Assembly (NCBI GenBank): GCA_001179505.1
Contig: CDMY01000271.1
Location: 62,001-126,000, forward strand
DNA length: 64,000 bases
From: Vitrella brassicaformis CCMP3155
Lineage: Eukaryota; Protista; Chromerida
Direction: 5' to 3'
Made by a program: the position numbers and the translations under genes. A model generated the notes under the pieces. That model had not been told where the DNA came from, did not search any database, and worked only from the letters and a program-made list of their open reading frames with translations. Of the stretch, positions 512 to 32,900 are shown one piece after another. The number at the start of each line of letters is the position of its first letter. Position 1 is the stretch's first letter.

Positions 512-3500
512 CTACTCTGGCCGAAAGTAATCGGTGATCCGCCGCTGCCGTGGTGGGACATGCACACCAACGGGGCGGATCTCAAGGCGATAGTCGAACT
601 CTAGCTGCGACAGCTCAACCATCTCGTAACCTCTATTGCGCAGGAGGGCGTAAAACTGCCCCCTCTCCTCACCGTACGTCACCCAGACAGACTCGATGAC
701 ATGGTCGAGTGGGGGCGGGTCAGCCCATGTGTGTGCCTGTCTCATCTCCCTCTCCTGCCTCGCACGCCGTCTCTCTCTCCAAACCGCCTCCCTGTCGAAC
801 CTCTGCCTCTCTGCCGCCCACACATGACGGTTGGCTATCTCTTCCTCGATGAATGCGGTCATGTGTGCACGTGCAGCGTCTGAATCTGGGTGCATGCCGT
901 CGCCTGCGTCCTCCATCTCATCATCAAGATCATCCGGATGATGACCAGAGGAGGATGCACACGACGGCATGGATGCGTCGCTGTCGCTCAGCTCAGTGGC
1001 ACACTCATCGTCAGTGTATATGTGGTCGAGCCGCTCTTCCACTCTGCACTCCAGCACAAGTGAAGGCAGACGGGGAAACGCATCGAGGGCAGACAGGCAG
1101 ACAGGCGCTAGCTCGTGCACGTAGGCCTGCTCTGCGTAGTGCTCCAACGGCACGTCAGCTACCCGCAGTGACACCTGGCTGATCCTGTCGACCACCCGGC
1201 CCTCTGTCTGCATCTCGTCTGCTCCTTCCTGGTCCCCCCTGCCCACACACAGTGACCACTCGTTGGCCTGTGACCTCCTCTCTCTCTGTGAGGAATGCGC
1301 TCGCAGATGGAGTGAGGGGCGCTCGCTGACACACTCACGCAGGCAAAGTGGCACGGCGCTAGGGAAGCGCATGTCGCCGTCAGACCTCTCTGGGAGGAAG
1401 GTGACGGTCTGCAGCTTCGGCAAGCGACTAAAGGCTACCTGCACCACCCCCTGGCCAATCATAATGGTGCCCCCTGCCCTCTGCGCCTGGCTCAGATCGA
1501 GACAAGTGACACGCGGGAAGAGAGAGCCGCGAAAAGACTCCAAGAGGGCGTCCGGCAGGGGAGACCAGCCCTCACGAGTCCTGTCTACACTCAGGCGTGT
1601 GACTCGCGGAAAAGTGAGACCAGACACGACAGTGGATAGGGTAAGGGCAGACGAGTAGGAGTAGGTGGGCGACGGGAAAGGGTCGAGGCCGCTCGGAATG
1701 GACGCTTCTGTCGCCAGAGAGGCCAGCAGCTTGACCGTGGTCGCCCGATCCCAGAGGTCGCTGGCGGAGAAATTGAACAGCTTTCTCATGGGGAATGAGA
1801 AGCTGCGGGTGGTTGTGTAGTCCTCGCGAGCGCCTGGGGCCAGCCAGTACTGCCGAATCGAATGCAACTCCTGCACCAAGAAGCAAGCGCACAGCCTGTC
1901 TTTGCCTTCGCAGTGCCGCCAAGAAGCAAGGCTCACTCACCTTAATACAGCAGAAGGTGACCTCCTTGATGTCTATCTCGGCCGTGAGCTCCTCCAGCTT
2001 GCACGACGTGCTGGCAGCCTGCGTCTCCGGAAAGACGCCCCAATAGCGCAAGCCGGTGACCTTGGGGCCCTTGAGCCGCTTGAGCGTCGTTCTGTTCTGC
2101 ACCACAGGCTGCAGGTCGCGGAGCTCCATCCCTCTGGCTGTGAGGGCGATGGGGCCCGCGCTGTCAGCTGGCCCCATCCATGTCGAAATGTGCCTGCATA
2201 TTGGGTACGGAGTAACTGCCCACTTCGACGTCCAGCTCCTCAAGAGGCCTGTGGACAGACAGACAGACAGACAGACACCAAGAGCAGCCGGACTCAGCAG
2301 AGCAGACAGACGCACATGGGATGCGTGTGAGATGTGTGGGTTACCTCGTCGTCCAGTTGCGATGATGTGCTATTGACACCCACCCGCCACTGACTTTCAC
2401 CTGCACACCAGAGAAGGGGCAGGGCAGCAGGAATGGAGTCAGACACCAGCAGACAGTTCTGTCTGACTCCCGCACTCGGGCACGCACCTTGGTGAGCCTG
2501 AAGAAGTCCCTAGGGTATGGCAACCGGATGGCATCTCCTCTTTGGCCCCGGCAGCAAGCCTCGAGGGACTTGAGGGTCGCAGCTGCGCGCTCGACCAGCA
2601 TCACCAGCTGCACTGTCGGGGCTGCGCGAATGACCATCGCTTCAGTCCGACTGAACAGGTGCAACCACTCACGGCTCTGCTCCCAAGTCATCCTGACGCA
2701 GGAGCGGGATCTGATGACGACGGTGCGGTGCATGGGCTGCCGGCGGGACAGCGAGTGGAGGGAGGGGTGCGCACGAGCCAGATCCACTAGAACGGACTGC
2801 GTACCTGCAGCCAAACCGACCCAACCAACACACAGCAAACTTGCTGCCTGTTTTGCCGTGCGCTTTGGCCAATCGCCGTGGGCTGGCTGCTTTGCTTACC
2901 CAGAAGGGGGCTGAGAAATCGATACCATAGTGGCTCGGGAAGGTCGCACAGGAGCGCAGGCGTCACAACCTGAAGTTGCAAGGGCCAACCAGCCAGCATT
3001 GCGCGGGCGGCTGTAGAGTGCCTGTCTTTCTTGCTGCCTGCCTTTGTTTGCGCCCCACTTACCGGCAGGTTGAGCGTCTCGGCGATGAAGTCACACTTGG
3101 TGTGGGCCCGCTGGATGAGCTGTTTCTGCGGCTCAAGGCCTTGGCTCATCACCGACGCGGCCTTCAGCAGCTTCAGGCAACACTTGTAGTGGACTGACAC
3201 ACGCTGAGAAAAGCACAGCGCAGTACACGGCAACGACTCATTGCAAGCAGCTGAGCCTGCCTGCCTCATCGTATCCTCCCTCTCACCTCGGCAACGGTTT
3301 CTTCCAGCCCCGACGCCTCCTTGGAACACTTCAGGGCAAACACCTCCTTGGCCTGCATCCAACGCGCCGAGTGAATGAGTCATGCAATTCGACCCATGCC
3401 AGCCAAGTGAATGAAGGTGTCCGCACCCTTCCTTACCCGCGCATTGAGTGTGTCCATGCGCTGTCCTACATCGTCCAGCCGACGCCTCGCAGCCGCCACA

Positions 3501-3764: not shown

Positions 3765-3840
3765 AGGGTTAGAACCCTGAAACCCAAACCCTTGTAGATT
3801 CTTTTATCCGTTGTGGCGCGCGCGCAGATTCGCGCGTATC
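3765..3840. promoter_or_regulatory. Telomere-like motif cluster plus GATTCGCGCG in divergent promoter
   Basis: AGGGTT-AG-AACCCT inverted pair 3765-3778, then AAACCC and AAACCCT to 3792; GATTCGCGCGTATC 3827-3840. Confidence 0.45.
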
Positions 3841-3974: not shown

Positions 3975-6268
3975 ATGGCAAAGCAGCAACAGCAGCAGCA
4001 ATACACGTCAGCCCGAAGACCACAAAGGAAAAAGGTGAGTCACACCAGCCAGCCCAAATGATATGAGTCACACCTGCTGCTGTTCTGACGCCTCTCGTGC
4101 CTCGCCTTGCTTCTGTGTGTGTGTGTTGTGTGTGCAGATCGTTTGGCTGTGAGTGAGTGAGCATCTCTTTGCCATGGCGCTGCAGCCGTTCCTCCAAGAC
4201 AACAAACTCAACGTCTTCCGGACGCGGCCGTGCGAGCGTCTGGCCCGCTACCGCGACGGCCACTGGCAGTCGGGGAAATGTCAATTTGGCTCCAAGTGCC
4301 AGTACAGCCACAACGCCGACTGGCTCAGGCGGCCGCCTCTCCTTGACCTCAAGGGAACAGCTGGCCCTGGTGAGGGTGGGGGCAGGGGCGGCAGGCCGTC
4401 ACCTGGCGGTGGCGGTGCCACCGGACCGGGGCCGAGTTTTCGGTATGTGGCTTTGTATTGTCCATTCATCCGGATCGAGGGCGGCAAGCTGGTGGAGACG
4501 ACGTGCACGAGGTCGGATGGGTGCCCCTTCGCACACTCGTATGAGGAGCTCATCTTCCACCCACTCTTCTACAAGACGCTCCTGGTACGGACTGACTGAC
4601 AGGCAGGTTGACAGACAATACACACACGGGGAGTGGTGGGAGGGGGGGGATGATCGATTTACGTGCATGGCTTCGGTGGACTGCTTCTCTCTCTCTCTCT
4701 CTCTCTCTCTGTTCTGTGTTCTGTGTTGTGTGTGCTGTTGGGTGGTGCTGCAGTGTCCCGATCACACGCACTATGGCCACTGTCCGAGGTATGTGTGCAG
4801 CGCAGGCAGACGGAAGAGAGACTGCACTGCATCGATCACTCACTTTTTCCCCTTTCTGTCTCTTTTGTGCCTTCCTTTCAGGTACTACTGCCACTTCGCT
4901 CACAGTGAGCATGAGCTGCGCGACCCCCAGTCGCTGGCTGACATTCCCAAGCCGCAGCTGGACCCCCACCTCCTCTCCCTCTCAATCGCTGCCTCATCAC
5001 CCACACTCGTCAGCCCAGCCGACATCGAGAACAGCCCACAGCTCTCGCTCGCCTACAGCCTCCCCCTACACCCGTCCGTCACGCCCCTCCTCGGCATCGG
5101 CCCCACCACTCTGCCCCAGATGCCCTCGCCTGTCGGTGGCGGCCCATCGCCCGCTGGTTCGGTGACGCCCAACTTCTTCCCCGGGTACCCCCAGGCGGCA
5201 GGCACTTCGCCCATGAGCGCGCCGTCGCCCTCTCAGGGCGGCCCCGAGGAGCGGCCTGACCATCAGCAGCAGGACCACTACATCGGCGTGTCGGGCTACG
5301 GCTTCCAGGAGCCTTATTTTCACTTCCGCAGCCGGAGTGTGCCGGCGGAGCAAGCAGCGTCGCCCACACGCGTCCAGCAGCAGGAGGGCGGGGAGGGCCC
5401 CACCAGCACGACTAGCAGCGGCACAAGGACACCGCCGAGGAGGGGAGGGCGGCACACCGTGAGGCACCCTTACTCGTACACGGGCAAGTGTCGGGTGGTG
5501 GCGCCCATGCCTCTCGTGACGGTCAGGGAGATGCCACCTGACGTACCCTCATTCCCAGCCGTCCCGCCCCCGCAATTCCCGCTCCCGCTTGGCCCACCAC
5601 CAGCGGCCGTCAGCGTGAGTCCATACCAGCACATGCATGCCACCATGGCCCCAGCGCCAGCTGTCAGTGTCGCTGCCCCGCCTCCTCCCCCACCCCCGCC
5701 ATCCTCAGGAGCACCGCCACCGTCACCATCACCATACCCTCATCCGCCCGGCCNNNNNNNNNNNNNNNNNNNNNNNNNNNNNNNNNNNNNNNNNNNNNNN
5801 NNNNNNNNNNNNNNNNNNNNNNNNNNNNNNNNNNNNNNNNNNNNNNNNNNNNNNNNNNNNNNNNNNNNNNNNNNNNNNNNNNNNNNNNNNNNNNNNNNNN
5901 NNNNNNNNNNNNNNNNNNNNNNNNNNNNNNNNNNNNNNNNNNNNNNNNNNNNNNNNNNNNNNNNNNNNNNNNNNNNNNNNNNNNNNNNNNNNNNNNNNNN
6001 NNNNNNNNNNNNNNNNNNNNNNNNNNNNNNNNNNNNNNNNNNNNNNNNNNNNNCCCCTCCACCCCCACCACCACCCTCACCACCACAAGCGCCGCCGCAG
6101 GTGATTATCACAATATCACTGGAATATGGCGATCGAATCAATCATGCATTTCTGTCTGTCTGTGTTTGTCTTGGTGTGTGTATGGTTGTTTGGTGTGTGC
6201 AGCCACCGAGCGAGGGGTACGTGTACCGCTATGGGCACCCAGCACAGTGGCCGGGCTACAGAGGCTGA
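3975..6268 (+). CDS. Unkempt-like tandem CCCH zinc-finger RNA-binding protein with Pro-rich C-terminus
   Basis: Spliced exons 3975-4034, 4186-4584, 4754-4788, 4882-~6100 and 6203-6268 give three CCCH fingers: FRTRPC..CQFGSKCQYSH..WLRRPP, YCP..CTRSDGCPFAH and YKTLLCP..CPRYYCHFAH. The gene crosses the N gap 5754-6053. Confidence 0.8.
5754..6053. other. Assembly gap (300 N)
   Basis: N run flanked by C-rich, Pro-coding sequence. Confidence 0.95.
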
Positions 6269-6732: not shown

Positions 6733-7032
6733 NNNNNNNNNNNNNNNNNNNNNNNNNNNNNNNNNNNNNNNNNNNNNNNNNNNNNNNNNNNNNNNNNNNN
6801 NNNNNNNNNNNNNNNNNNNNNNNNNNNNNNNNNNNNNNNNNNNNNNNNNNNNNNNNNNNNNNNNNNNNNNNNNNNNNNNNNNNNNNNNNNNNNNNNNNNN
6901 NNNNNNNNNNNNNNNNNNNNNNNNNNNNNNNNNNNNNNNNNNNNNNNNNNNNNNNNNNNNNNNNNNNNNNNNNNNNNNNNNNNNNNNNNNNNNNNNNNNN
7001 NNNNNNNNNNNNNNNNNNNNNNNNNNNNNNNN
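6733..7032. other. Assembly gap (300 N)
   Basis: N run flanked by G-rich tracts. Confidence 0.95.
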
Positions 7033-12163: not shown

Positions 12164-13368
12164 CCTCGCCTGAGCCCGGCTGCCTCCTCGTCTGCCTGTC
12201 TGAGGTCTCTTGTCTGAGGTCTTTTGTGAGTTTGCCTGCCAATGACGATTTGGCCCGCAGTTTTTTTCTCTCCCCTTGTATGTGAGTGGCTGCGAGTTGG
12301 TGGGGAAGGCCACAAGGGGTCGGGTTCTTACTTGAAAATCTGTAAGCGGCGTTTTCCAGAGACAAGACATGTGCCTCGTCTTTCTTGGGATCCTTGTCAT
12401 ATATGTATGTCTACATAATTGTAAGACCTCTCTCCCTGTGCAGTCAGTGGTGTGTCGGATGCATTCACCCATATACACAGTTTTGACTGACTGGCGACTC
12501 TCTCGTGGCTGTATGTATGTATGTATGTGGGTCAATGCCAACGATATCTCTCTCTCTTCCAGCGATCTCCCTCCCGCCTGATCATTGCGTGTATGGCTGT
12601 AGGTGCATGCCTTCATGTGCATGTCTGTGATATTTATCCATCATCATGTGCCTGCCTGCCTGATGCACACGATGCACACGGTACACATTCATACGCTGCT
12701 GCCTCGTCTGCGACGTCACGATTTTATCCATCGGCTGCGAGTCTGCCTGAGTGCAATGTGTGTGTGGATGCGACATCACGCAACAGCGCACACCATTAGT
12801 GTCATGCATCTACACACCTGTCTGTCTGGCTAGCCTAGAAGGGACACACGGGGGGCTAGCCTGGACACATTCGTGTCGTTTTTATCCATCATGTGTCACG
12901 ATTGTGTCCATCGGCTGCCTTCCTGGCACTACACCATGGCTGCTTCCCCTCCCTGCCTGTCGTGGATGCGCTGCACGTCTTGTTCTCCAACGACATGTGT
13001 GGTGTTTGTTCCTTCGTGACACGGGGGGAGCTATCTTTTGTCCATCGCTGTGCGTCGTTGTCGCCCTCTTGCAGACACGCATGGTTACCGTCTGTCTGTC
13101 TGTCTGTCTTTCTGTCCATCCGTTTCGCACGACAACACGGGAAGGGGTGCTTTTTGCGCGCACACGCATCGGCACTCTCTCCAGGCTTCTCAAGTTCACA
13201 CAAACAAAGCACCTATCGACCCTTCGCCGTATGTGTCTGTCGGTCTGTCTGTCCGTCTTTGCATGTACGTGGGCAGGGGGTTGTTTTTCCACACGAACCG
13301 GGACGTGGGGTTCTAAATCAAGTTCACATAACAACGTGAGCCCGTTCCCAGATGTAAACGGAACTGAT

Positions 13369-13386
13369 CTGCAATCCGGATTGCAG
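13369..13386. promoter_or_regulatory. Perfect 18-bp palindrome 4 nt upstream of the TopoVIB-like ATG
   Basis: CTGCAATCCGGATTGCAG equals its own reverse complement. Regulatory function is inferred from position only. Confidence 0.5.
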
Positions 13387-13390
13387 CCAG

Positions 13391-16300
13391 ATGGATGGGT
13401 TGATGGATTCGGGCCCTCCCGGCCTATCCGGAGGCAACTTCTTCCTTGAAAGTGAGCACAGCACATCCATCCATCCATTCACCATGGTGTCCATGGCATT
13501 TGCTTGTCCGCTTATCTCTCCACCCGTGCAGACATGGCGCTGACGGGGTTCACTGCGGATGAGGGCGTGCTGATGACGGCCAAGGAGCTCGTCGACAATG
13601 CACTCGATGCCGTCAAGCGACTGCAGCCGCACGCACGGCAGTTCGAGTGCCAACACAAACAGCGTACGACGAACAAGGATGGATCAGGGCCGCTGCAGTG
13701 CCTCCGTGTGTGTGCTGTGTGTGCAGAGGTAGAGGTGTTGCTTGAGGATCACGGTTTGAATGATGAGGACCTGCTGCACCCCACCGATGGGCAGCGTTTC
13801 GTTGAGGTGGTGGTGAGGGACTCGGGCATAGGCCTCCAACACAACAACGTCGACCTCCTCGGTGCGTCGATCGGTGTGGGTGCATTGCACGACACGTGAG
13901 GCGAGAGAGCCCATCGGTGTTGTGTTTGTGCATGAATGCAGGCACGATATTCGGCAGCTCTTCGTCCGCACAGAATGCCGCCAATGACGCACTCAGCGTC
14001 GCCGGCAAATTCGGTCGGTACGCACACACGTCGGACACTCAGGGGTGACGTCCGATGCGCGTATGCAGGTGTTGGCCTGAAGATGGTGCTGCTGAACTCA
14101 CACATCCACGCAGACGGCACTGTGCGCATCAAAAGCAGACGTAAGGCGACACGGGGGAGGGGTGCAGCCACCGAACTCCTCGTACGTGTCTCGTCTGTCA
14201 GTGTCTTCGCGAGAGTTTTTCCACTTCTCGTTGTCTTACAGTGGCGACGACGGCGAGGTGACGGCCCAGCCAGCAGAGGATGCCATCGCAACCAACTTCC
14301 CATTCATGACTGAGTGAGCCCACCCCGACAGACCATTCTGGACGAGAGGTTCGATTGGTTCAGGTTTCGTGTGTGCATCGCCTACCCATCTGAGACACTG
14401 CTGCCGTCGATTCAGCGCCTCTGCAACTACCTACTGCTGGTAGGTACCAACGGGGCACGGCGTTCACAGATGTTGCTTACCAGTCGTTTCTTGGTGCGGG
14501 CATGATGTGTCAGGCCAAGGTGTGGCATCCTGAGCTGGAGCTGCGCCTGTGTGTGGAGTGCCAACACGTCGACATGCACCCCTTCACACTGGACACGACA
14601 CACCAACACCCACAGGAAGTCATCAGCTCACTCATCGGGTCAGAATCCTGCTCGTCCAGCGCACAACACAACATGGCCTTTTACCCATCTCCTTCTGCCC
14701 TTTGGTTGCAGTGTGGACGGTGCGGGCTCGTCTGGCAGTTCGTCGGTCGTGGTGCACCACACACATTTCGGTGCCACCTTCAAATGTGAGATGGTCGCAG
14801 TCCTGGACAAGAAGGCACCACAGGCGGGCCACCACGGCCAGCAGACCGCCGAGCAGGGTGAGGGTGACGAGGCCGACGACGACGCCACCCAGCATGAGGA
14901 GGCCGACGGCCCTCCTGAAGGCGACGAGCTGAGACGCGCAAGCGACGACCAGACATACAATGGGACCATACAGGTGAGAGAGAGCGGGACTGGCGCATTG
15001 GGATCGTCTACGGCTCTGATATCCTGTGTACGTGTCTGTGTGTTCAGCTGTATCGGAGTGTGAACGGGATGCCACTGTTGTCGAGTGAGGCGCTGTCATG
15101 CGGGCTGACGTCCCTGATGGGCGGCTTCCTCCGGAGAGAGGGCGAGCAGTACGGCATCACACTCAACAACACGCACAACAATACCACAATCGCACAAGCC
15201 AACCAGGATGACTCTCAGGGGTAGGGGAGGAGAGAACGAACGAACGAAAGAAAATATCGATATGATTGGATACAAGGAAACCAGGCCATCCGTCTGTGTG
15301 TGGGATTTGTGCACAGTGGCATGCTTGGGGGCGTGGAGTGCGTGACGTTCACCATCGCAAAGAAGACAGACGACTGGACGCGGCTGCGAGTGGTGGGGTG
15401 CTGGCCAACACAATACTACAAGGATTCGTCTGACACATTTGCACTCTGTGTGTGTGTGGTGTGTGTCGTGCGTCGTGTCGTCAGTTTGTGAATGTGAGCG
15501 GTGCGTCGATGGAGTTCGGTTCGTTTCAGAAGTCTTTTGTCAAGGCATCCCACCACCTGGAGACGGCCGTGCTGCAGTGCACAAGGGCCATCTTCAAGGC
15601 ACTCAGACACAAATGCCCCGACGCGTTCCAATGCGACGAGGAACGACGGGTGAGAACGCACACACAGATCCACCGACAAGAGGTGCCTGCAGGTGAGCAT
15701 CGCTCTCCTTCTTGGTGTCTCTTTGTGCAGTATGAGGCGGCCAGGACGATTTTCCTGCCCGTCATGTCCAGCAACCTGTGCGACATCGTATTCAGAAGTG
15801 AGCCAGACGCGCAAGGCACAGACGAGACATGAGCCCTGTGCTGCCTTGCCCTTCTTCTTGTTCAGGTCAGAATGGTGCGTTCCGCGATGAGGTGCTGTCG
15901 CTGTTGTCACTCGCAATGCAACGAATGGGTAAGTGAGATACGCTCTCCCTCTGGACCCACACGCCTCCTTGTGGTTCTCAGAGGCCTCGGCGCAGCTTGC
16001 AGACGCCCCTGACGCCGCTGCGGGTGCTGCTGGTGATGGTGGTCCCCCCGACTCCCAAGCCACCATCCGCGTCGACTCGCAGCAGCATCAGGAGCATGAG
16101 GCACCACCACCACCACCACCACCCCTCTCCCGCCCCCAGGCCGAATCCATCCTCACAGCCCTGCTGCAGAAACGGCTCGACCGACTCAGCGGCGGCCCCA
16201 ACGGCGCCAAGGCCAAGAGCAAAAAGAAGAAGAGGCGCAGGGCGGCGGGTGCTGGTGTGGCGGGTGGTGGTGTGAGGGCGAAGGCCAAGGCCAAGAGGGC

Positions 16301-16576
16301 GCCGGCACCGCGGGCTGCACGTGACATGGATGACACGCTGAGGGAGGAGGACGGTGGCCCGGAGGAGGGAGAGGGAGAGGGAGGCGAGGGGGAGGGGGAG
16401 GACGAGCAGCAAGACGACGATGCCAACATGCAAGACACGTACGGACGCCTACCCCCGCAGCGTGGCCTGCAGCATCATGGGTGTGGTGTGTGAGAGTGTG
16501 TTTGTATTTTTGCAGGTATGATGAGGAGATGGGCGGTGGTGGCTCGCCGTACGAGGACCTCATCGAAGGGTGGTGA
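13391..16576 (+). CDS. TOP6B: Topoisomerase VI subunit B-like protein (GHKL ATPase + transducer, no H2TH evident, acidic tail)
   Basis: Spliced N-terminus SGGNFFLENMALTGFTADEGVLMTAKELVDNALDA matches SPAEFF..N..LAGF...RELIENSLDA. Also DSGIG (G1) and GKFGVGLKMVLL (plant TOP6B GKFGLGAKMAL), transducer LYRSVNGMPLL and EQYGI, switch-loop-like EFGSFQKSF, and stalk FLPVMSSNLCDIV. Confidence 0.85.
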
Positions 16577-16781
16577 CTGACTGACTGACTGATTCAACCA
16601 TCCCAGCATGTGTATTTGTACGCGACTGACTGAGTGAGCGGATGAATGCGTGCATTGAGGACCATCATCGCATTAGTGACATGATCAAAGAGCGGCTGCA
16701 CCGCGCACGTCTCAAAAATCGCGTCCTATTCACCCATCCACCACCACAACTGCCTCGACATTTGTCTGCCTGCCTGTGTGC

Positions 16782-17081
16782 NNNNNNNNNNNNNNNNNNN
16801 NNNNNNNNNNNNNNNNNNNNNNNNNNNNNNNNNNNNNNNNNNNNNNNNNNNNNNNNNNNNNNNNNNNNNNNNNNNNNNNNNNNNNNNNNNNNNNNNNNNN
16901 NNNNNNNNNNNNNNNNNNNNNNNNNNNNNNNNNNNNNNNNNNNNNNNNNNNNNNNNNNNNNNNNNNNNNNNNNNNNNNNNNNNNNNNNNNNNNNNNNNNN
17001 NNNNNNNNNNNNNNNNNNNNNNNNNNNNNNNNNNNNNNNNNNNNNNNNNNNNNNNNNNNNNNNNNNNNNNNNNNNNNNNNN
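16782..17081. other. Assembly gap (300 N)
   Basis: N run followed by a poly-C tract. Confidence 0.95.
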
Positions 17082-17319: not shown

Positions 17320-19016
17320 CTACGCCTCCCCAGCTGACACTGGTTGTGTCTGCCTCTCGCTCGCCTTCTCTACTCGCGGCACCTCCTCCTTGCCGCCGCT
17401 GCTGCTGCTGCTACTGCTGGTGGTGGTGGTGTCAGCTGCCATCGTGGTTGCCTCAGGGGGCACCAGTGCCGCCCCGGCAGCGGCCCGCCCGTTGACAGAG
17501 ATGTCCCCCAGTATCTCATCGTCCTCTCGCGGCCGCCTGGATGCCCGCGGCGGCACTGCATGCGTCTGCGCGTCCTTGAGGAGGTCCTCCCAGCTCATGT
17601 TGAGTATGTCCGACACGTCCGGTGTGGGCAGCATGTTCTTGAGCTCCTCTGGTATGATGTCGTCGAGCTTGATGTCATACTCGATGGGGTTGCTCTTGAA
17701 GTACTGCTTGAGGGACCAGCTGATGGCCGTGACCAAGACGTTGCTGGCAATCCAGTAGATGACCAGGGCACTCGGTACCGACAGGGCGAAGTAGCCGATG
17801 AGGAAGGGAAGGTACTTGAGCAGCTCCTGCACACGTTTCGACTGCTCGTCCTCGGCCGGTGGCGTCAGGATGGCCTGCGAGATGTACTGCGAGATGACAT
17901 AGATGACGGGGACGGTCAGGTAGAGCAGCGTTGCCTCCCATCCGAGCGGAGGATTGGAGCCGTCCCAGCCAGTGGTGAGCCAGTTGAGTGCCTGTGCGGG
18001 GTCGGCACCGAATGTGGGGCCCTCGAGGTTGGGGATCCAGAGGAAGCTCTCGCTGAGCTGGCCGTCCTTGGCGAGATTGGACAGGCTGCGATAGAGGCCC
18101 AGGAAAATGGGAATCTGCACGAAGGCCGGCAGGATGGAAGCCAGGGGGTTGACCTTGGCCTCCTGGTACAGCTGCGCCGTCAGGAGGGTCTGGATCTGCT
18201 GGTTCTTGCCGAAGCGCTTCTTGATCTCCTGCACCACCGGGTTGAGGGCCTGGATCTTCTGCGTGCCCTGCATCTGGTTCCACGTTATGGGGAAGACGAA
18301 GATGCGGATCAGCACGGTGAAGACGATGATGGCCCAGCCGAACTGGGGAATGCCTGCACACAACACGCGACAGGCAGGAGAGTGAGAGGAGACATCGAGA
18401 TATCCCTGGAGCCGCCGTGCTTGCTTCCCCTATCCCCTGTGCACTTGCTGACCGAATTTGTCTTCCATGACGTGGTGCACTTGATAGATCATATTCTCCA
18501 GGAAGCTCACGTAGTTGTCCCACCATCCCGGCTCCTTGGCCACCTCCTCAGTGACGGTCTGGACTGCCTGTCCGACGGCCTCCCCTCCCTCCCCGGCAGC
18601 CTGGGCCACACCCTGCAGCACCTCCATGACGGGCCCGAACCCACCGGCTGACACGGGTGGCGACGGGATGAACGACAGGGCGGCGGGGAGGAGGGCTGAC
18701 AGGGTGGTGGGATCCAGCATGCGCGGAGAGGGGCGAGACCGACGCAATGGTGGACGAGAGGCCTGCAACGACCGCACATAATGGTTTGCCATCAGGCCTC
18801 ACGGATCCTGTCGTGTCCATTCTACCTGCAGCCTGTTCACGGCGGTGAACGCTGAAGTCCTCGCGAAGCCAGCCTGAATACACCAGACAGCATGCACGGT
18901 CATGCTCCTTCCGTGATCTCTGTGTGCATGAGGATGCTCTTGCTCACGGCATAGTGGTTGAGGCCGATGCAGAGAGCCAGCGCAGCGGCGAGCCACTGCC
19001 TCCGATGATACCTCAT
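17320..19016 (-). CDS. ALB3: Plastid YidC/Oxa1/ALB3 membrane insertase with bipartite targeting presequence
   Basis: GWAIIVFTVLIRIFVFPITWNQ..IQALNP..IKKRF, VNPLASILPAFVQIPIFLGLYRSL, FLWIPNLEGP and ALVIYWIASN. Extra 5' exons 19016-18948 and 18873-18826 encode MRYHRRQWLAAALALCIGLNHYAAGFARTSAF. Confidence 0.93.
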
Positions 19017-19240: not shown

Positions 19241-22200
19241 ATGAGCAGCGGCGGTCCATCGTCGGGCCTTCGTGGCCCTGAGGGCGAGGGCGGGAGTGTG
19301 CGGATGGAGTTCGACGGCGATGACATCCCCCCCTTCGCCAACGAGAGCAACAAGCGGCTGGATGCGGCCATCAAGCAGAAGAAGGCGCGGCTGGTGGACA
19401 TGGAGGAGCAGATCACGGAGGTCACCGAGAGGGTCCAGACCATGACCAGCCACCTCAAGAATGTGCAGCAGGAATGCCAGCACACACAGGCCCTCGTCGA
19501 GGCCAAGAACAAGGAGATAGAGACGGAGGAGCATATGACACATCTCGCCAAGAGGCAGGCCGCCCGTCTCGGTGCCGAGTTGAAGCGATTGGAGGGGCTC
19601 ATGGAAGAGTACCAGGTCAGCAAGACAGCCATGACAACGCATAGCATATGTATTGCTGCGGTATGATTGTCTTTTATCTTTCTATCTTTGTTGGTTGTGT
19701 GTGTCCACAGGACCGGATGAATACGAACCAGAATGAGATCTTCAAGGGCAACGAGAAGCTGGACCAGTTCAAACTGGAGATGAACTGGAACCAGGAAGAA
19801 CTCGAGCAGTGGGCAGTCGCCGCTAGACAGAAAGAGGTCAGCAAGCATAGCATCTGTACCAAACACACCAGTGGGAGACACGAATGTTGTATCGATGCTT
19901 GATGTCCTGGCGTGTGCAGGAGGACAATCTGACGATGGACAAGTACCACCGTGCAGACGAGCAGAAGATCCGCGACCTCAACCTGGCGGTGCAGAAACTC
20001 ACGGTCGGTGCGCCCGAATATAATACTGCAGCGGAGACACCAGTGAGTGACATATGAAGACGCTTGGCTTCCTGTCCTGTCTGTGTGTGCAGATGGAGGC
20101 CAGTGAGAAGAAGGACGAGTTGGAGAAGGAGGTGACGGAGACACAGGCAGCACAGATTGAGCTGGAACGCACTGCCGAGCAGTTCAAGAAGCTGCACATC
20201 GACCGACACGCACTCATCAAACAATGGTCAGTCATGCAAGCATGGCAACCATCGATTCTCCCCTGACGCCGCGCTTGTTGTTGTGTGTGTCAGGGAGGAT
20301 GCGGTGACGGCCATGCGGAAGCGAGACGAGGCAATCCGCCAGGCTGGGGAACACTATGCAGCCCTCCAGAATGACATCAAAGTGCAGCAGCAGAAGCTCG
20401 GTGAGGATATATCGGTGAAGCCGTCCACATCTCCCTGTGCATACATACATGTCTTGATTGGCCTGTCAGGCAAAGCCAAGGCGTTTTTGGCTCAGGAGCG
20501 AGCCACCAACGATCAAGTGGAGACAGAGATTGGCAACACCGACAGACAACTCGTAAGGCAAATTTCTGCACCAAGACGAGAGAGAGGAGAGAGGCGCTAT
20601 TCTCACATGTATGTGACTCTGTCAGGCTAAGCTCCGTCTTGAGTACATGGATTCCAAGAATGGCCTCGTTGAGTTCAAAGACGAGGTAGGTCACAATACG
20701 CAGACACATCCGGAGCTCTTGTTTCCAGGTGCAATATCTCTCATCTGTATCAGGTGGAGGTCCTTCGCAATCAGCTGGCCGGCGCTGCGACAGAGCTGAC
20801 GAACCGCAAGAACAAGCTGGCCAGCGTCACTGAGACACTCGAAGAGAAGAAGAAAAAGTGGGGCGTGCTGCAGAAGAAGGTCGAGACCACAAACAAGAAA
20901 CTGGAAAACGAAATCAAGACAGCCGCCGACAAAGAGTCATACGCCAGAGAGGTCAGCGAGCCAGTCAAACGCACCTGGCCGTACGGCTTGTACGCGTGTG
21001 TGCCCGTCGTGTCTCAGGCTGAGGCACTGCACGCGGAGATGGACTACCGAATGCTTGAAGCAGAGAAGGAGCTCAAGAAAGTCAAAGAAGAGCTCTTCAA
21101 ACAAAATTCGGTGAGCCCTTGAGTCGCAACCGATAAGTCAACACACTGACGTATGCTCTCCTCACCTCAGGAGCTGTATGCGCTCAGAAACGAAGAGGCC
21201 ACCACTCTGGGCGAAATTTCAGGCGCACAGTCGTCCCTCAAGACACTCTCAGTAATCCATTCATTCTGGCACACATCTGTCTGTTTGTTTGTCTCATTCA
21301 GTTCCAGATCCACAAGCTGGACCAGGAGCGGCAGCGTCAGCAGGAGTTGCTTTATGCCGTCGACTTCCAGTCGCAGCTCATGCAGCGCAAGGTCGCTAGG
21401 GTGTCGGGGGAGCGCACATTCGAGGAAAAGGAGGAACTCAACAAAAAGATCGACCAACTCGAAAAGGTACGTACATGGGCACGGACACTCTATTCCCGAG
21501 CATCGCGTGACGTCTATTCTCTTGTTTGTGTGTTGCCAGCAATTGGAGGAGCAGGCGGGTCTCTGGCAGATCCTCAGCACACAAATCAAACGAGTTGACG
21601 CAGAACTCAGGTGCGTGTGGCTGCGATTGACCACAGAAAGAGTGCGTCTCATGAGATGCTTGTCTTCCTCCGTGCTGCTCAGGCAGAGTCGGCGTGACAT
21701 CGCCGCCGTGACCAAAGACGGCGAGGGCCTCAAGACCGTCCTCGATGAGATGAACCTGGAGAGCAAGTCGCTCAAGAGGGCGTTGCAGAACGCCCAGAAG
21801 GAGAGGGCTGATCTGCTGGTCACACACGACCTCCTCAAGCTGGATGTCAACCGTCTCCGCGAGTCCCTCAACGCACAGTCGGAGGAAGTCTTCGCACTCG
21901 AAAACAAAAAGTTCCAGCTCCAAATGACGTAAGCATGGGCCGAGAATACGATTGGAGCGGGCAATATCTATCGTGTCTCTTCCTTAGCATGGAGGAGCGC
22001 GAGAAAAAGGTCGAAGTCCACCAGGAAATTCTCAGAGCACAACAGGTGACAGAGGCAGCAATACGTGATCCTTGACACGCAGTAACTCGCCCTTTTCTCT
22101 TTGTGTGTCAGTGTTCAGCTGAGGAGGAGAAGTCGAAGATCGCCAAGGAGCTGGGGGAGCGCCGCAGCAAGATCAACATCCTCAAGTCCAAGTACGAGTC

Positions 22201-29914: not shown

Positions 29915-32900
29915 ATGCAGCGCCCCCCCGCCACACGTTGGGAGCCCAAGACGATGATGGGGAAGGGCAAGAAGCCTCTATCGCCCGAGGACGATAGCGA
30001 GGACGAACAGCCCCCTCCCCCTTCCTTTCCNNNNNNNNNNNNNNNNNNNNNNNNNNNNNNNNNNNNNNNNNNNNNNNNNNNNNNNNNNNNNNNNNNNNNN
30101 NNNNNNNNNNNNNNNNNNNNNNNNNNNNNNNNNNNNNNNNNNNNNNNNNNNNNNNNNNNNNNNNNNNNNNNNNNNNNNNNNNNNNNNNNNNNNNNNNNNN
30201 NNNNNNNNNNNNNNNNNNNNNNNNNNNNNNNNNNNNNNNNNNNNNNNNNNNNNNNNNNNNNNNNNNNNNNNNNNNNNNNNNNNNNNNNNNNNNNNNNNNN
30301 NNNNNNNNNNNNNNNNNNNNNNNNNNNNNNCCCCCCCCGGCCCAGCCTTCTCCTCCCCCGTCACCTCCCTCTCCCGTCCCCTGCCTCCCCCTGACGGGCT
30401 TATCCCATCCCCCATCACACATACCCACTCCCCACCCCGTCGACGACGACCTGATAGGCTGTTTGGATTTGCTCCAGTGTCTGTTTCTGGTTGTGGCTCA
30501 GACCGAGGTGATGAAGAGTATCCTGGACATGGACATGCCACCATGTGCAGCAAAAGAACTCCAACATCCACGCGACCACAAGTGAGGAAGAATGAAGGAG
30601 ACATGTACGAGCACATAATCCTGGCAAGTGAAATGTGTGTCTGTCTGCATAGCTCTCACCATTCTGGTACACTCTTCAGTCGCTCTAGCGATATGGAGGC
30701 AAAGGGGACTCGAGAGAGCCGGAAGAAGGATTTCGTGACGACAATTGAGAAGTGAGACATCAAACACATCTAGTTGTGTGTGGTGTGTATATCATCTGTT
30801 TTTCTCCATCCAGAGCAAAGCAAATTGCCGTTCGGTTCCTTCGTCAGCTGACGTTGAAATTGGATGAGTATCAAGCCGGTCAGACGATTGATACATTCTA
30901 TCCACAGCTCAAAGACAGCGAACGACAGTCTCATCAGAAGGAGCGGGAGTCTTGGGAGGACAAGTCATCAAGCACTTCATTCGGGAAAGTGATGGACTTC
31001 ATCTTGAGGCATTCTTCCTACTGGGATCGTAAGCAGAGGACTATTGATGCAAGCCTACTGTGTCTCGCCTGCATCTTTCCTTTATTTCACTCTCTGCATC
31101 TGCATCAGTTCAATACTCAGACTCTCTTGAGGAACGTCTTGAAAACCGAATTCGACGGATGGGCGGGGTTTTTCCAAGCAACAACATGGAAGACGACCTG
31201 AAGGCCCTTCTTCGGGCATACTTCTTGTTGTCCGAGCGCTTTGTACGGCTCGTGAGCTATTCAAGCGAAAGGGCTATTCAAGAGAAGAACATGGACTTCA
31301 GAGTTCAAGAAACAATAGTCGTTCGCCAGCCAGCCAATGTCACCAAAGAGATGATCGCCAGGGATCAGGCGGAGCTCAGAAAGCCAGCTCCCGCCCCTTC
31401 TTTCTTAGCTGGGACTGCGGGGGACCTAAAGGGTGATCTGGCGCGCCCTCTGCGACGATCGAGTTGTGTTGAAGATGCTAGAGGACAGCTGGCGGCTATG
31501 GAGGTTATCCTTCAAGACAGGAACCGTGACCAGCTTAATCGTCAGAGTGATGATCAGCCGCTCACCTATCGATCCTGCCAGCCAGTAAGCAGGAGAGAGA
31601 GGCAGATGCGAGAATGCGCATCTGATCACTTAAAGCGTGTCTCTCGATGTTTAGGCTGTGGATGCGTTAAGAGGACGCTCCTATACAGCCGGGGAGAGCA
31701 TGTTGCGTTGGCAGCTTCAGATGTTCGACAAAGCATCGCGGTCCACTTCTCGACTGCAGCCTGAGACACCTGCTATGGAGACAGCAAAGGACTTGTTCTC
31801 CGTGGCACTGCCGGCAGCTGTGGTGTTCGCCAGAAGTCCGTCTCTGCCTCCGCTGGAGTCAGTGATAGCGGCTGCTTCAATAGGAAAGGTAGCTCCGTCA
31901 GCGCAGAACAAAAAAGAATGCAGACGGGGATACAGCGACGCCAATCACTGCGTCTCATCCTTTCTTCACTGCTCTGTTTTCGTTCAGAATGCGCCTGAGG
32001 AAGATACGGACGCTCACCCACCTTCGCTGCAGGCAAGTGATGTGTGCCTACCGCTCAGTGTGCGGCGTGCGATGCTCGTTTCCGGCTTGTCACTGGAGGA
32101 TATCTCGGCGATGCAGGGGCAACAATATGGAGAGGAGAGCGGCCTATCGGACGAAAATACATGGAGACGCCCTCCAAATGTAAGTCACCTCAAAATTAAA
32201 AGAACTGGCTGTCGCACACCATGATTAATTACTGCTGAGTGCTTGTATCAGGCTGGTGTGGTGGAGGAGACACCGGATTGGAATGACGAGATAAATGCCA
32301 AGATTGCAGCGGCGCAAGCAAACAGGGTACGAGAACTAGAGCACGACATCGAGGAGCTGCAGCGTCAGAAAGGGAAGACGGACGAAGAGAACGCGGCCCT
32401 TAAAAACGACATTCGGGCGGTGAAGAATGAGAAGGAGCGGATGGAGACGGACACAAAGAACCTATGGCGGTGTAACAGCGAACTCCGTCAACACCTGGAG
32501 TTGGCCGAGCAGCACGAGAATAATATCAAGGATCTCTTACAGCAAAACAGAACGGCTCTGAGCGAGCAGGTACGGTCCCGGTATCTGAACACTTTAAGCA
32601 CACACTTGTCTATCACTCAAACATTCACTAGCATGCGTCGATTGCCGCGTGTTTGTCCCTTCTTACAGTTCCCACAAGTCCTGCAGAGGATGTCGAGGCT
32701 GGAAGAGAGACACGAGGAACTGAACAACACTGTGATGACTGAACTTCCTCGTCTCAAACCACCCCCCTCCCGCGCAGACGAGAAGCTCACCGAGGTGCTG
32801 CAAAAGCTCTGTCACTTAGAGGATCTCGAGGCCAAGATGACGGACATGCTCGTCAGCATCCACGCGAAGGAAGCCGCCCAGGCATCGAGCCCCACATCAC

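What the first reader, a model, noticed from the sequence alone, without database searches (positions are those of the whole stretch)
13391..16576. TopoVIB-like protein intermediate between archaeal/plant Top6B and meiotic MTOPVIB/TOP6BL
It keeps the ATPase N-box with catalytic Glu (KELVDNALD), G1 (DSGIG), G2 (GKFGVG) and a switch-loop-like lysine (GSFQKSF). It appears to pass from GHKL almost directly into transducer strands with no H2TH domain, and the WKxYG motif is eroded to GEQYGI. Loss of H2TH is characteristic of meiotic Spo11 partners, whereas intact ATP boxes are characteristic of topoisomerase B subunits. It is a candidate Spo11 partner in a lineage whose meiosis is poorly characterised. 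The first exon (13391-13451) is missed by the ORF track.
Basis: partly seen in the sequence, partly recalled or inferred. Interest (0 to 1): 0.75.

Follow-up and report, generated by a model that had tools for sequence, protein, structure and literature searches.

The report
Divergent Topo VIB-like gene without H2TH
This is a real, transcribed 16-exon gene of the alga Vitrella brassicaformis for a very divergent relative of the ATP-binding B subunit of topoisomerase VI that lacks the DNA-binding H2TH domain, a type already described in related protists as the likely partner of the meiotic DNA-cutting enzyme Spo11.

Summary
Window 13391-16576 (+) is a 16-exon gene. Spliced contigs from two studies confirm 14 of its 15 introns. 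It matches the public 702-aa protein CEL98482.1 / A0A0G4ENB0, listed as "unnamed/uncharacterized".

- **GHKL domain:** residues 10-168 are Topo VI-B type. They carry the N-strap, the N-box (E39, N43), G1 (D96-G100) and G2 (G131-G136). NCBIfam Top6B gives E 9e-15, hhalign against archaeal Top6B gives 96% probability, and a MutL profile gives only 3.8 bits.
- **Transducer:** the C-terminal half matches the archaeal transducer weakly but collinearly, including the N355 strand, K448 and P497. Only 0-1 of 2000-3000 shuffles reach the real score. The ESM Atlas model's nearest structures are Top6B families, a plant MTOPVIB-like cluster and an oomycete cluster.
- **H2TH:** no trace was found.
- **Eroded features:** the G3 glycine, three invariant lid residues and WKxY are not kept, so "intact ATP boxes" is only partly true.
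- **Novelty:** H2TH-less Topo VIB-like proteins with conserved Bergerat boxes are already published for chromalveolates, SAR and Apicomplexa (PMC9665070, PMC11302465). This is a new, unusually divergent member of a known kind; sequence searches found no relative.
- **Untested:** Spo11 partnership and ATPase activity.

The scan noted this same stretch once more in an overlapping window (s1-218707).

The parts
13391..16576 (+). Whole coding region: 16 exons, 2109 nt, 702 aa plus stop. Equals public protein CEL98482.1 / UniProt A0A0G4ENB0.
13391..13451 (+). Exon 1 (residues 1-20 plus one base). ATG at 13391; in-frame stop upstream at 13355.
   Evidence: Joint 13451>13532 in spliced contig
13532..13663 (+). 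Exon 2: end of the N-strap and the N-box.
13727..13861 (+). Exon 3: G1 box. Follows a 63-nt intron (13664-13726) that a raw ORF reading reads through.
   Evidence: Joint 13663>13727 in two runs
13942..14013 (+). Exon 4: ATP-lid region and first half of G2.
14069..14140 (+). Exon 5: second half of G2 and the following strand.
14202..14313 (+). Exon 6: GHKL beta strands.
14364..14439 (+). Exon 7: strand at the G3 position, and a helix.
14514..14638 (+). Exon 8: end of GHKL and start of the short linker.
14712..14973 (+). Exon 9: Gly/Ser linker, first transducer strand, acidic insert.
15048..15220 (+). Exon 10: LYRSVNGMPLL strand, helix, GEQYGI, Asn-rich loop.
15317..15392 (+). Exon 11: extra strand and W427.
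15485..15649 (+). Exon 12: strand, lysine loop (K448), long helix.
15731..15797 (+). Exon 13: helix with P497.
15866..15928 (+). Exon 14: last transducer helix.
15982..16438 (+). Exon 15: low-complexity tail (Pro run, Lys/Arg run, acidic Gly/Glu run).
   Evidence: Contig covers 15981-16355. The 3' end at 16438 comes from the match to P0001; that joint is not in the listed rows.
16516..16576 (+). Exon 16: last 19 residues and the stop.
   Evidence: RNA-derived contigs start at 16516 in two runs
13424..13551 (+). N-strap, residues 12-27 (spans intron 1). Aligns to the N-terminal strap of S. shibatae and other archaeal Top6B.
13582..13611 (+). N-box, residues 38-47, with E39 (general-base position) and N43 (Mg position).
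13816..13833 (+). G1 box, residues 95-100 (D96, G98, G100).
14004..14076 (+). G2 box, residues 131-136 (spans intron 4).
14309..14385 (+). Strand at the G3 position, residues 194-202. Archaeal 'GT' most likely aligns to E195-F196, so the G3 glycine is absent. MAFFT offers G175-E176 instead.
14622..14766 (+). Short Gly/Ser-rich linker, residues 257-280 (spans intron 8). It stands where canonical Top6B has an H2TH domain of about 80 residues.
14806..14961 (+). Acidic low-complexity insert, residues 294-345, between the first two transducer strands.
15048..15080 (+). Transducer strand, residues 350-360. Candidate anchoring Asn N355; matches the archaeal lyryankiPll motif.
15141..15158 (+). GEQYGI, residues 381-386. 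First candidate remnant of WKxY (Tyr kept, Trp and Lys lost).
   Evidence: Spacing from the strand. Inference.
15369..15383 (+). DDWTR, residues 425-429. Second candidate remnant of WKxY (Trp kept, Lys and Tyr lost).
   Evidence: MAFFT aligns W427 with the invariant archaeal Trp
15518..15538 (+). Lysine loop, residues 444-450. K448 aligns ungapped with the invariant Lys of the archaeal G-K-E motif.
15539..16025 (+). Helical C-terminal part of the transducer, residues 451-545 (spans introns 12-14). Presumed Spo11-binding stalk. P497 aligns with the invariant archaeal Pro at the same 49-residue distance from the lysine.
   Evidence: Spo11 binding is inferred.
16026..16549 (+). Low-complexity, probably disordered tail, residues 546-694 (spans intron 15).
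   Evidence: Composition
16550..16573 (+). Terminal motif YEDLIEGW, residues 695-702. A possible partner-docking peptide.
   Evidence: Sequence only. The analogy to the Trp-containing C-terminal REC114-binding helix of mouse TOPOVIBL (PMC9671922) is speculative.

Best explanation
The gene encodes a Topo VI-B-family protein of the H2TH-less, Topo VIB-like (TOPOVIBL/MTOPVIB) type.

**Shown here.**
- An N-terminal Top6B-type GHKL domain with a dimerisation strap and N, G1 and G2 boxes.
- A short Gly/Ser linker directly after it, in place of the H2TH domain.
- A divergent Top6B-type transducer: two strands split by an acidic insert, an Asn-bearing strand, a lysine loop and a helical stalk.
- A long low-complexity tail ending in a short Trp-terminated motif.

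**Inferred mechanism, from what is established for Topo VI and TopoVI-like complexes.**
- The helical end of the transducer binds a Spo11-type A subunit.
- The GHKL domains bind nucleotide and/or dimerise through the strap, and this helps bring two Spo11 protomers together for double-strand cleavage.
- Without H2TH the complex would act as a break-maker (meiotic DSB formation) rather than a strand-passage topoisomerase.
- Because G3 and several lid residues are lost, ATP turnover may be weak or absent.
For: - **Real, expressed gene.** GT..AG joints appear in spliced contigs of two runs from two studies. The model is identical to the public protein.
- **Top6B-specific N-terminus.** NCBIfam NF003218 'DNA topoisomerase VI subunit B' gives E 9.1e-15 for residues 13-168. 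The best PDB sequences are S. shibatae Top6B (1mx0, 1mu5, 1z59, 2zbk; E about 0.002), with the strap included in the alignment. hhalign against 8 Pfam-verified archaeal Top6B gives probability 96%, E 4.8e-9.
- **Discrimination from MutL.** 120 prokaryotic proteins were selected only for sharing the N-box. The eight best matches to P0001 are all among the nine archaeal Top6B in that set. A MutL profile scores 3.8 bits against 28.6 bits for Top6B.
- **Transducer.** Three collinear HMM matches were found: profile 11-147, 368-386 and 411-505 against residues 12-168, 346-364 and 431-525. The real sequence scores 5.9-6.2 bits; 0 of 3000 global, 1 of 3000 block and 0 of 2000 shuffles reach it.
- **Structure, independent of my alignments.** The ESM Atlas's own model has pTM 0.63. 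Its nearest structure is a 483-aa eukaryotic, mostly oomycete, GHKL cluster (TM 0.75 by row, 444 residues aligned). Next come Top6B families carrying Pfam Topo-VIb_trans. For residues 257-560 alone the listed nearest structures are four Topo-VIb_trans families, a Streptophyta 'topoisomerase 6 subunit B-like' cluster (171 residues aligned) and one GyrB-type family.
- **No H2TH.** The H2TH profile finds nothing. About 100 profile positions have no counterpart.
- **Published criterion.** Absence of H2TH is the published distinction between Topo VIB-like and Topo VI-B (PMC11302465; PMC9665070).
Against: - Pfam Topo-VIb_trans does not hit. HATPase_c is just under its cut-off (25.8 against 26.4 bits).
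- The transducer similarity is weak: about 6 bits, and TM 0.39-0.49.
- The second half of the GHKL domain is no better than shuffles against the archaeal profile.
- Both AlphaFold2 runs failed (pLDDT 37 and 35), so I have no model of my own and ran no fold search.
- No homologue was retrieved by any sequence search. There is therefore no conservation or phylogenetic evidence, and no direct comparison with apicomplexan or oomycete TOPOVIBL sequences.
- Expression stage is unknown. No Spo11 interaction was tested.
- G3 and the lid invariants are lost.
Confidence: 0.7

Rival explanations
1. It is the B-type partner of the Vitrella-private family of very divergent Spo11/Top6A-like genes that sit head to head with AP2 genes, not of the canonical meiotic SPO11. 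Together they would form a lineage-specific type IIB-like DNA-cleaving machine with a non-meiotic role.
For: - Earlier scan notes (unchecked by me) report several such Spo11-like genes in this genome.
- This protein is itself a sequence orphan, as would be expected for a co-evolving private partner.
- Transcripts are present in ordinary RNA data sets.
Against: - No AP2 or Spo11-like gene lies next to it in this window. The neighbours are an Oxa1/Alb3 insertase and a CCDC39-like gene.
- Nothing links it to that family beyond shared divergence.
- Fast-evolving TOPOVIBL is the rule even with canonical SPO11 (PMC9665070).
Confidence: 0.1
2. It is a degenerate canonical topoisomerase VI B subunit (TOP6B) that has lost H2TH but still works with a SPO11-3-type A subunit as a topoisomerase.
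For: - The N-strap and the N, G1 and G2 boxes are kept, along with a lysine at the G-K-E position.
- The stalk has archaeal-like spacing from K448 to P497.
Against: - All canonical TOP6B surveyed keep H2TH, G3 and WKxY (PMC11302465 and PMC9665070). Here H2TH, G3 and WKxY are not kept.
- TopoVI is reported absent from Apicomplexa and Perkinsozoa, the neighbouring lineages.
Confidence: 0.07
3. It is a GHKL ATPase of another family (MORC, MutL, Hsp90 or sacsin-like) whose S5-fold second domain only superficially resembles a transducer.
For: - Weak NCBIfam hits to HSP90/HtpG and the sacsin ATP-binding domain (E 1e-5 to 1e-3).
- A Morc6_S5 cluster appears at chance level (0.82) in the feature search of the C-terminal part.
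Against: - Top6B is the best family by ten orders of magnitude.
- The Top6B-specific N-strap is present.
- The MutL profile scores 3.8 bits on the N-box only.
- The family sets listed for the nearest Atlas structures are Top6B families, an oomycete GHKL cluster, a plant TopoVIB-like cluster and, for the C-terminal part, one GyrB-type family. No MutL, MORC or Hsp90 set appears.
Confidence: 0.07
4. It is a decaying or functionless remnant of a TopoVIB gene that is merely transcribed.
For: - Extreme divergence and loss of G3, lid residues and WKxY.
- No detectable orthologue.
- Large low-complexity inserts.
Against: - An uninterrupted reading frame runs across 16 exons with canonical splice sites and correctly spliced transcripts.
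- The catalytic-position residues E39, N43, D96 and K448 are retained.
Confidence: 0.06

Closest known systems
TOPOVIBL with conserved GHKL in chromalveolates/SAR, e.g. Aphanomyces astaci (Brinkmeier et al. 2022, PMC9665070)
   Same: - N-strap plus N, G1 and G2 boxes are retained, H2TH is absent, and a transducer with C-terminal helices is present.
- The nearest ESM Atlas cluster, by both features (0.98) and structure (TM 0.75 by row), is a 483-aa eukaryotic, mostly oomycete, GHKL protein family without a Pfam transducer hit. I take this to be that group.
   Different: - No sequence-level hit to any of them could be obtained.
- The Vitrella protein is longer (702 aa). It has a 52-residue acidic insert, an Asn-rich loop and a tail of about 150 low-complexity residues.
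- That the Atlas cluster is the published oomycete TOPOVIBL is my inference, not checked.
Apicomplexan putative TOP6B (pTOP6B), re-assigned to the Topo VIB-like family (Allen et al. 2024, PMC11302465)
   Same: - A sister lineage of chromerids.
- GHKL domain with N, G1 and G2 boxes but no G3-box glycine.
- No H2TH.
- A transducer-like domain.
   Different: - Apicomplexan pTOP6B is similar enough to Top6B to be auto-annotated as such. The Vitrella protein is annotated only as uncharacterized and falls under Pfam cut-offs.
- Orthology was not tested, because no apicomplexan sequence could be fetched with these tools.
Archaeal topoisomerase VI subunit B (S. shibatae 1MX0/2ZBK, M. mazei 2Q2E)
   Same: - The best sequence match in the PDB and in NCBIfam.
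- Shared strap, N, G1 and G2 boxes, the Asn-bearing strand, the G-K-E-position lysine and the Pro in the return helix, in the same order and with the same K-to-P spacing.
   Different: - No H2TH. G3, WKxY and lid residues K104, Q109 and R111 (L066 numbering) are not kept.
- In the first 150 residues only 18 of 41 invariant archaeal columns are kept.
- Inserts and a tail are present.
Plant MTOPVIB / mouse TOPOVIBL
   Same: - H2TH-less GHKL-like domain plus transducer architecture.
- The transducer part of the Atlas model aligns over the most residues (171) with a Streptophyta 'topoisomerase 6 subunit B-like' cluster.
- A long disordered C-terminal region ends in a short Trp-containing motif, as in the mouse REC114-binding helix (PMC9671922).
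   Different: - Plant and animal proteins have lost the N-box and most ATP-binding residues. This one keeps them.
- The C-terminal motif analogy is speculative.

Membership tests
Topoisomerase VI subunit B (canonical Top6B/TOP6B) | N-terminal strap and Bergerat N, G1 and G2 boxes | tested here: met
   NCBIfam NF003218 E 9.1e-15. hhalign probability 96% over residues 10-158. E39, N43, D96, G98, G131, F133, G134 and G136 sit in columns invariant across archaeal Top6B.
Topoisomerase VI subunit B (canonical Top6B/TOP6B) | G3-box glycine and conserved ATP-lid residues | tested here: not met
   phmmer aligns S. shibatae 'GT' to E195-F196. Archaeal invariants K104, Q109 and R111 (L066 numbering) are not kept. 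Caveat: MAFFT offers G175-E176 as an alternative for G3.
Topoisomerase VI subunit B (canonical Top6B/TOP6B) | H2TH domain between GHKL and transducer | tested here: not met
   The H2TH-only archaeal profile gives no match in residues 151-460. 221 profile positions correspond to 178 residues, of which 52 are an acidic insert. The transcript-confirmed exons leave no room.
Topoisomerase VI subunit B (canonical Top6B/TOP6B) | Transducer domain (Pfam PF09239) with anchoring Asn and switch Lys | tested here: inconclusive
   Pfam PF09239 does not hit. The archaeal transducer profile scores 5.9-6.2 bits, and 0-1 of 2000-3000 shuffles reach that. N355 and K448 are in register. The Atlas model's nearest structures carry PF09239, at TM 0.39-0.61.
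Topoisomerase VI subunit B (canonical Top6B/TOP6B) | WKxY motif | tested here: not met
   The motif is either G381-E-Q-Y or W427-T-R-L. Neither keeps the full motif.
Topoisomerase VI subunit B (canonical Top6B/TOP6B) | Co-occurrence with SPO11-3, RHL1 and BIN4 in the genome | not testable with these tools
   Only this 64-kb window is readable. The scan notes list no such genes, but they are not exhaustive.
Topo VIB-like (TOPOVIBL / MTOPVIB / apicomplexan pTOP6B) | GHKL or GHKL-like fold derived from Top6B | tested here: met
Topo VIB-like (TOPOVIBL / MTOPVIB / apicomplexan pTOP6B) | Complete absence of H2TH, the published discriminator (PMC11302465, PMC9665070) | tested here: met
   criterion
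Topo VIB-like (TOPOVIBL / MTOPVIB / apicomplexan pTOP6B) | Transducer-like domain ending in helices that bind SPO11 | tested here: inconclusive
   Residues 431-525 match archaeal transducer profile positions 411-505 collinearly and ungapped. Structural neighbours include a plant TopoVIB-like cluster. The helix count could not be read from a confident model, because AF2 failed.
Topo VIB-like (TOPOVIBL / MTOPVIB / apicomplexan pTOP6B) | Physical interaction with SPO11 and requirement for meiotic DSBs | not testable with these tools
   No multimer prediction or experiment is available.
Topo VIB-like (TOPOVIBL / MTOPVIB / apicomplexan pTOP6B) | Phylogenetic grouping with known TOPOVIBL, e.g. apicomplexan pTOP6B | not tested
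   No TOPOVIBL sequence could be retrieved. All sequence searches returned only the protein itself.
MutL / other GHKL ATPases | Match to a MutL profile beyond the shared N-box | tested here: not met
   A profile of 60 MutL sequences scores 3.8 bits on residues 38-47 only. In phmmer no candidate outside the Top6B set scores above 3.3 bits.

The most novel reading that the evidence does not exclude
This orphan Topo VIB-like protein may not be the ordinary meiotic Spo11 partner. It could instead be the missing B subunit of the Vitrella-private, AP2-linked family of divergent Spo11/Top6A-like genes reported elsewhere in this genome. Together they would form a lineage-specific, possibly ATP-gated, type IIB DNA-cleavage system acting outside meiosis.
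Probability: 0.1. Interest if true: 0.7.

Novelty: new member of a known kind. Interest (0 to 1): 0.35.

Why it matters
- **Lineage gap.** Chromerids are the free-living photosynthetic sisters of Apicomplexa. Naming their Topo VIB-like subunit fills a gap between the dinoflagellate, perkinsid and apicomplexan surveys. Neither survey mentions Vitrella or Chromera in the text I could search.
- **Annotation.** It gives a functional label to a protein that is public but uncharacterized.
- **A test case for ATP gating.** The protein keeps the catalytic-position Glu, Asn, Asp and Lys but has lost G3, lid residues, WKxY and H2TH. That makes it a useful natural test of how much of the ATP gate a Spo11 partner needs.
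- **A concrete reagent.** It offers a starting point for studying the still-unproven sexual cycle of Vitrella.
- **Limits.** The kind of protein is already described, so this is an incremental finding.

Tried and rejected
- **Exon-by-exon Pfam and PDB searches by reference.** These gave only marginal results: HATPase_c E 0.07 and nothing in the PDB. Exon-level NCBIfam gave the first specific hint, Top6B at E 4.9e-4.
- **The one HMMER search of 1.84 billion representatives, with the N-box/G1 exon (an ORF piece that reads through the 63-nt intron).** It returned only the protein itself and a spurious bacterial repeat protein.
- **All three word searches** (whole protein, residues 1-262, residues 346-545; the last two at E up to 10). 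Each found only the protein itself.
- **The metagenome scan.** It found no relative.
- **AlphaFold2.** It failed both without an alignment (pLDDT 37) and with P0001 plus 8 archaeal Top6B (pLDDT 35). I therefore ran no fold search, because low-confidence models give meaningless matches.
- **MAFFT global alignments (A2, A3).** They mis-register the middle of the transducer, pairing the NGMPLL strand with the preceding archaeal strand. I trusted the HMMER local alignment instead, because it has 9 of 19 identities on the lyryankiPll motif.
- **The N-box DNA pattern scan of prokaryotic genomes.** It mostly returned MutL genes. I used these as a negative control.
- **The apparent 703-aa ORF at 4157-6268.** It runs through a 300-N gap and is an artefact.
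- **Joined sequence.** I did not build a joined exon sequence. Full-length analyses used the database protein P0001.
Full report
**What is there**

Window 13391-16576 on the + strand is a protein-coding gene of 16 exons.

- I laid contigs of four public runs on 13300-16700. Two runs, from two different studies, hold spliced contigs. One contig of 2014 nt carries 14 GT..AG joints.
- The last intron (16439-16515) is not among the listed joints. RNA-derived contigs in both runs do begin at 16516.
- An HMMER search of 1.84 billion representative proteins with the N-box/G1 exon returned a 702-aa public protein, P0001.
- Every exon translation, taken by reference and in its own phase, matches P0001 exactly. 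All 15 introns are GT..AG.
- P0001 is CEL98482.1 / UniProt A0A0G4ENB0, 'unnamed protein product / Uncharacterized protein' of Vitrella brassicaformis CCMP3155.
- An in-frame stop lies 36 nt upstream of the ATG.
All full-length work used the database record.

**The N-terminal half is a Top6B-type GHKL domain**

- Exon by exon the signal is marginal: Pfam HATPase_c E 0.07, NCBIfam Top6B E 4.9e-4, and nothing in the PDB.
- With the full protein, NCBIfam NF003218 'DNA topoisomerase VI subunit B' matches residues 13-168 at E 9.1e-15. That is ten orders of magnitude better than HSP90, sacsin or HtpG, though far under the equivalog cut-off.
- Pfam HATPase_c is just under its threshold, and Topo-VIb_trans does not hit.
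- The best PDB sequences are the S. shibatae Top6B entries. Their alignment covers the N-terminal strap, the N-box, G1 and G2.

To make a fair discrimination test I scanned prokaryotic genomes for DNA encoding the shared N-box.

- The scan gave 120 loci: mostly bacterial MutL, plus nine archaeal Top6B that I verified by mutual similarity and, for four of them, by Pfam.
- All candidates share the N-box by construction. Even so, the eight best phmmer matches of P0001 are all archaeal Top6B.
- A profile of eight Top6B scores 28.6 bits (E 3e-11). A profile of 60 MutL scores 3.8 bits, on the N-box alone.
- hhalign gives 96% probability, E 4.8e-9, over residues 10-158.
- E39, N43, D96, G98, G131, F133, G134 and G136 fall in columns invariant across archaeal Top6B.

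The ATP site is not fully conserved.

- Only 18 of 41 invariant archaeal columns in the first 150 residues are kept.
- The lid invariants K104, Q109 and R111 (L066 numbering) are replaced.
- The G3 'GT' most likely aligns with E195-F196.
- A missing G3 glycine is also what Allen et al. report for apicomplexan pTOP6B (PMC11302465).

**The C-terminal half is a weak but real Top6B-type transducer**

- The archaeal profile finds three collinear pieces:
  - profile 11-147 with residues 12-168;
  - profile 368-386 with residues 346-364, the Asn-bearing strand, with 9 of 19 identities;
  - profile 411-505 with residues 431-525, ungapped.
- The third piece puts K448 on the invariant lysine of the archaeal G-K-E motif. 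It puts P497 on the invariant proline 49 residues later, in both proteins.
- The scores are low (5.9-6.2 bits). However, 0 of 3000 global shuffles, 1 of 3000 block shuffles and 0 of 2000 shuffles reach them.
- The ESM Atlas holds this exact sequence with a model of pTM 0.63, independent of my alignments. Its nearest structures are a 483-aa eukaryotic, mostly oomycete, GHKL cluster (TM 0.75 by row, 444 residues aligned, feature score 0.98), then archaeal and bacterial Top6B families that all carry Pfam Topo-VIb_trans.
- For residues 257-560 alone, four of the six listed nearest structure sets carry Topo-VIb_trans. The others are a Streptophyta 'Type 2 DNA topoisomerase 6 subunit B-like' cluster, which I read as MTOPVIB (171 aligned residues, the longest alignment), and one GyrB-type family, which carries a related transducer. 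TM values are 0.39-0.49.
- No MutL, MORC or Hsp90 family appears among the structural neighbours.

**No H2TH**

- Between the GHKL match and the Asn strand the archaeal profile has 221 positions. P0001 has 178 residues there, 52 of which are an acidic low-complexity insert, so about 100 profile positions have no counterpart.
- A profile of the archaeal H2TH segment alone finds nothing in residues 151-460.
- The last residues that align to the end of the S. shibatae GHKL domain ('HPQEV', 252-256) are followed by a Gly/Ser linker of about 25 residues and then the first transducer strand.
- The transcript-confirmed exon structure leaves no room for a hidden exon.

**WKxY**

The motif is eroded whichever way it is aligned.

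- MAFFT instead aligns W427 (W-T-R-L) with the invariant Trp. That would fit the remark in PMC9665070 that mainly the tryptophan survives in TOPOVIBL.
- I could not decide between the two without a confident model.

**What failed**

- AlphaFold2 gave unusable models both without an alignment and with nine sequences (pLDDT 37 and 35). I ran no fold search.
- No relative was retrieved by any sequence search: the big HMMER search with one exon, three word searches, and a metagenome scan.
- The protein is therefore a sequence orphan. I could not compare it directly with oomycete or apicomplexan TOPOVIBL, or build a tree.

**Comparison with the literature**

- Brinkmeier et al. 2022 (PMC9665070) describe TOPOVIBL of several chromalveolates. 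[quoted passage not shown]
- Allen et al. 2024 (PMC11302465) make absence of H2TH the defining structural difference. On that basis they re-assign apicomplexan 'TOP6B', which has a GHKL domain without a G3 glycine and no H2TH, to the Topo VIB-like family.
- Neither paper mentions Vitrella or Chromera in the text or supplement I could search. No held paper links chromerids with topoisomerase VI.
- Vitrella is reported to keep the full core meiotic gene set (PMC7522995).

**Mechanism**

- Shown here: the domain order and the retained residues.
- Inferred from the family: the helical end of the transducer binds a Spo11-type subunit, and strap-mediated, nucleotide-dependent GHKL dimerisation helps assemble the cleaving dimer. 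Without H2TH the complex makes breaks rather than passing strands.
- ATP hydrolysis is doubtful, given the lost G3 and lid residues.
- The long low-complexity tail ends in YEDLIEGW. This recalls the Trp-containing REC114-binding C-terminal helix of mouse TOPOVIBL (PMC9671922), but the link is speculation.

**An open alternative**

- Earlier scan notes, not checked by me, report a Vitrella-private family of very divergent Spo11-like genes paired with AP2 genes.
- This orphan B-like protein could be their partner rather than, or as well as, that of canonical SPO11.
- Nothing in this window supports that link. The neighbours are an Oxa1/Alb3 insertase and a CCDC39-like gene.

**Verdict**

- This is a new, unusually divergent member of the H2TH-less Topo VIB-like family.
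- Its function as a Spo11 partner is inferred, not shown.

Noticed in passing
window 16782-17081 (also 5754-6053, 6733-7032, 30031-30330): Four 300-N assembly gaps. One begins about 200 nt after the stop codon of this gene, so its 3' UTR and terminator region are incomplete in the assembly. The apparent 703-aa ORF at 4157-6268 runs through a gap and is an artefact.
   Followed up: partly
window 17323-18366 (-): A long exon of an Oxa1/Alb3/YidC-type membrane insertase (Pfam 60KD_IMP, E 4.7e-42), convergent with the Topo VIB-like gene.
   Followed up: partly
window 21153-21929 (+): An exon with similarity to CCDC39 (Pfam PF24161, E 5.6e-10), an axonemal ruler protein. This is consistent with a flagellated stage in this alga.
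   Followed up: no
window 13464-13483 and 16574-16592: Short CATC(C) and GACT(GA) microsatellites lie in intron 1 and right at the stop codon. They attract many unrelated contigs, producing depth spikes and loose ends in the read lay-out, and should not be read as expression peaks.
   Followed up: partly
L070 (Thorarchaeota MAG), match at 3791-3816 (-): This archaeal locus carries the ELVENSLDA-type N-box in a 603-aa ORF that is not similar to Top6B in my phmmer test. It may be an archaeal MutL-like GHKL protein.
   Followed up: no
P0002: The only other hit of the large HMMER search was a 1092-aa bacterial-type protein made of tandem repeats of about 100 residues. It matched a short acidic/Gly stretch and is a chance hit.
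   Followed up: partly
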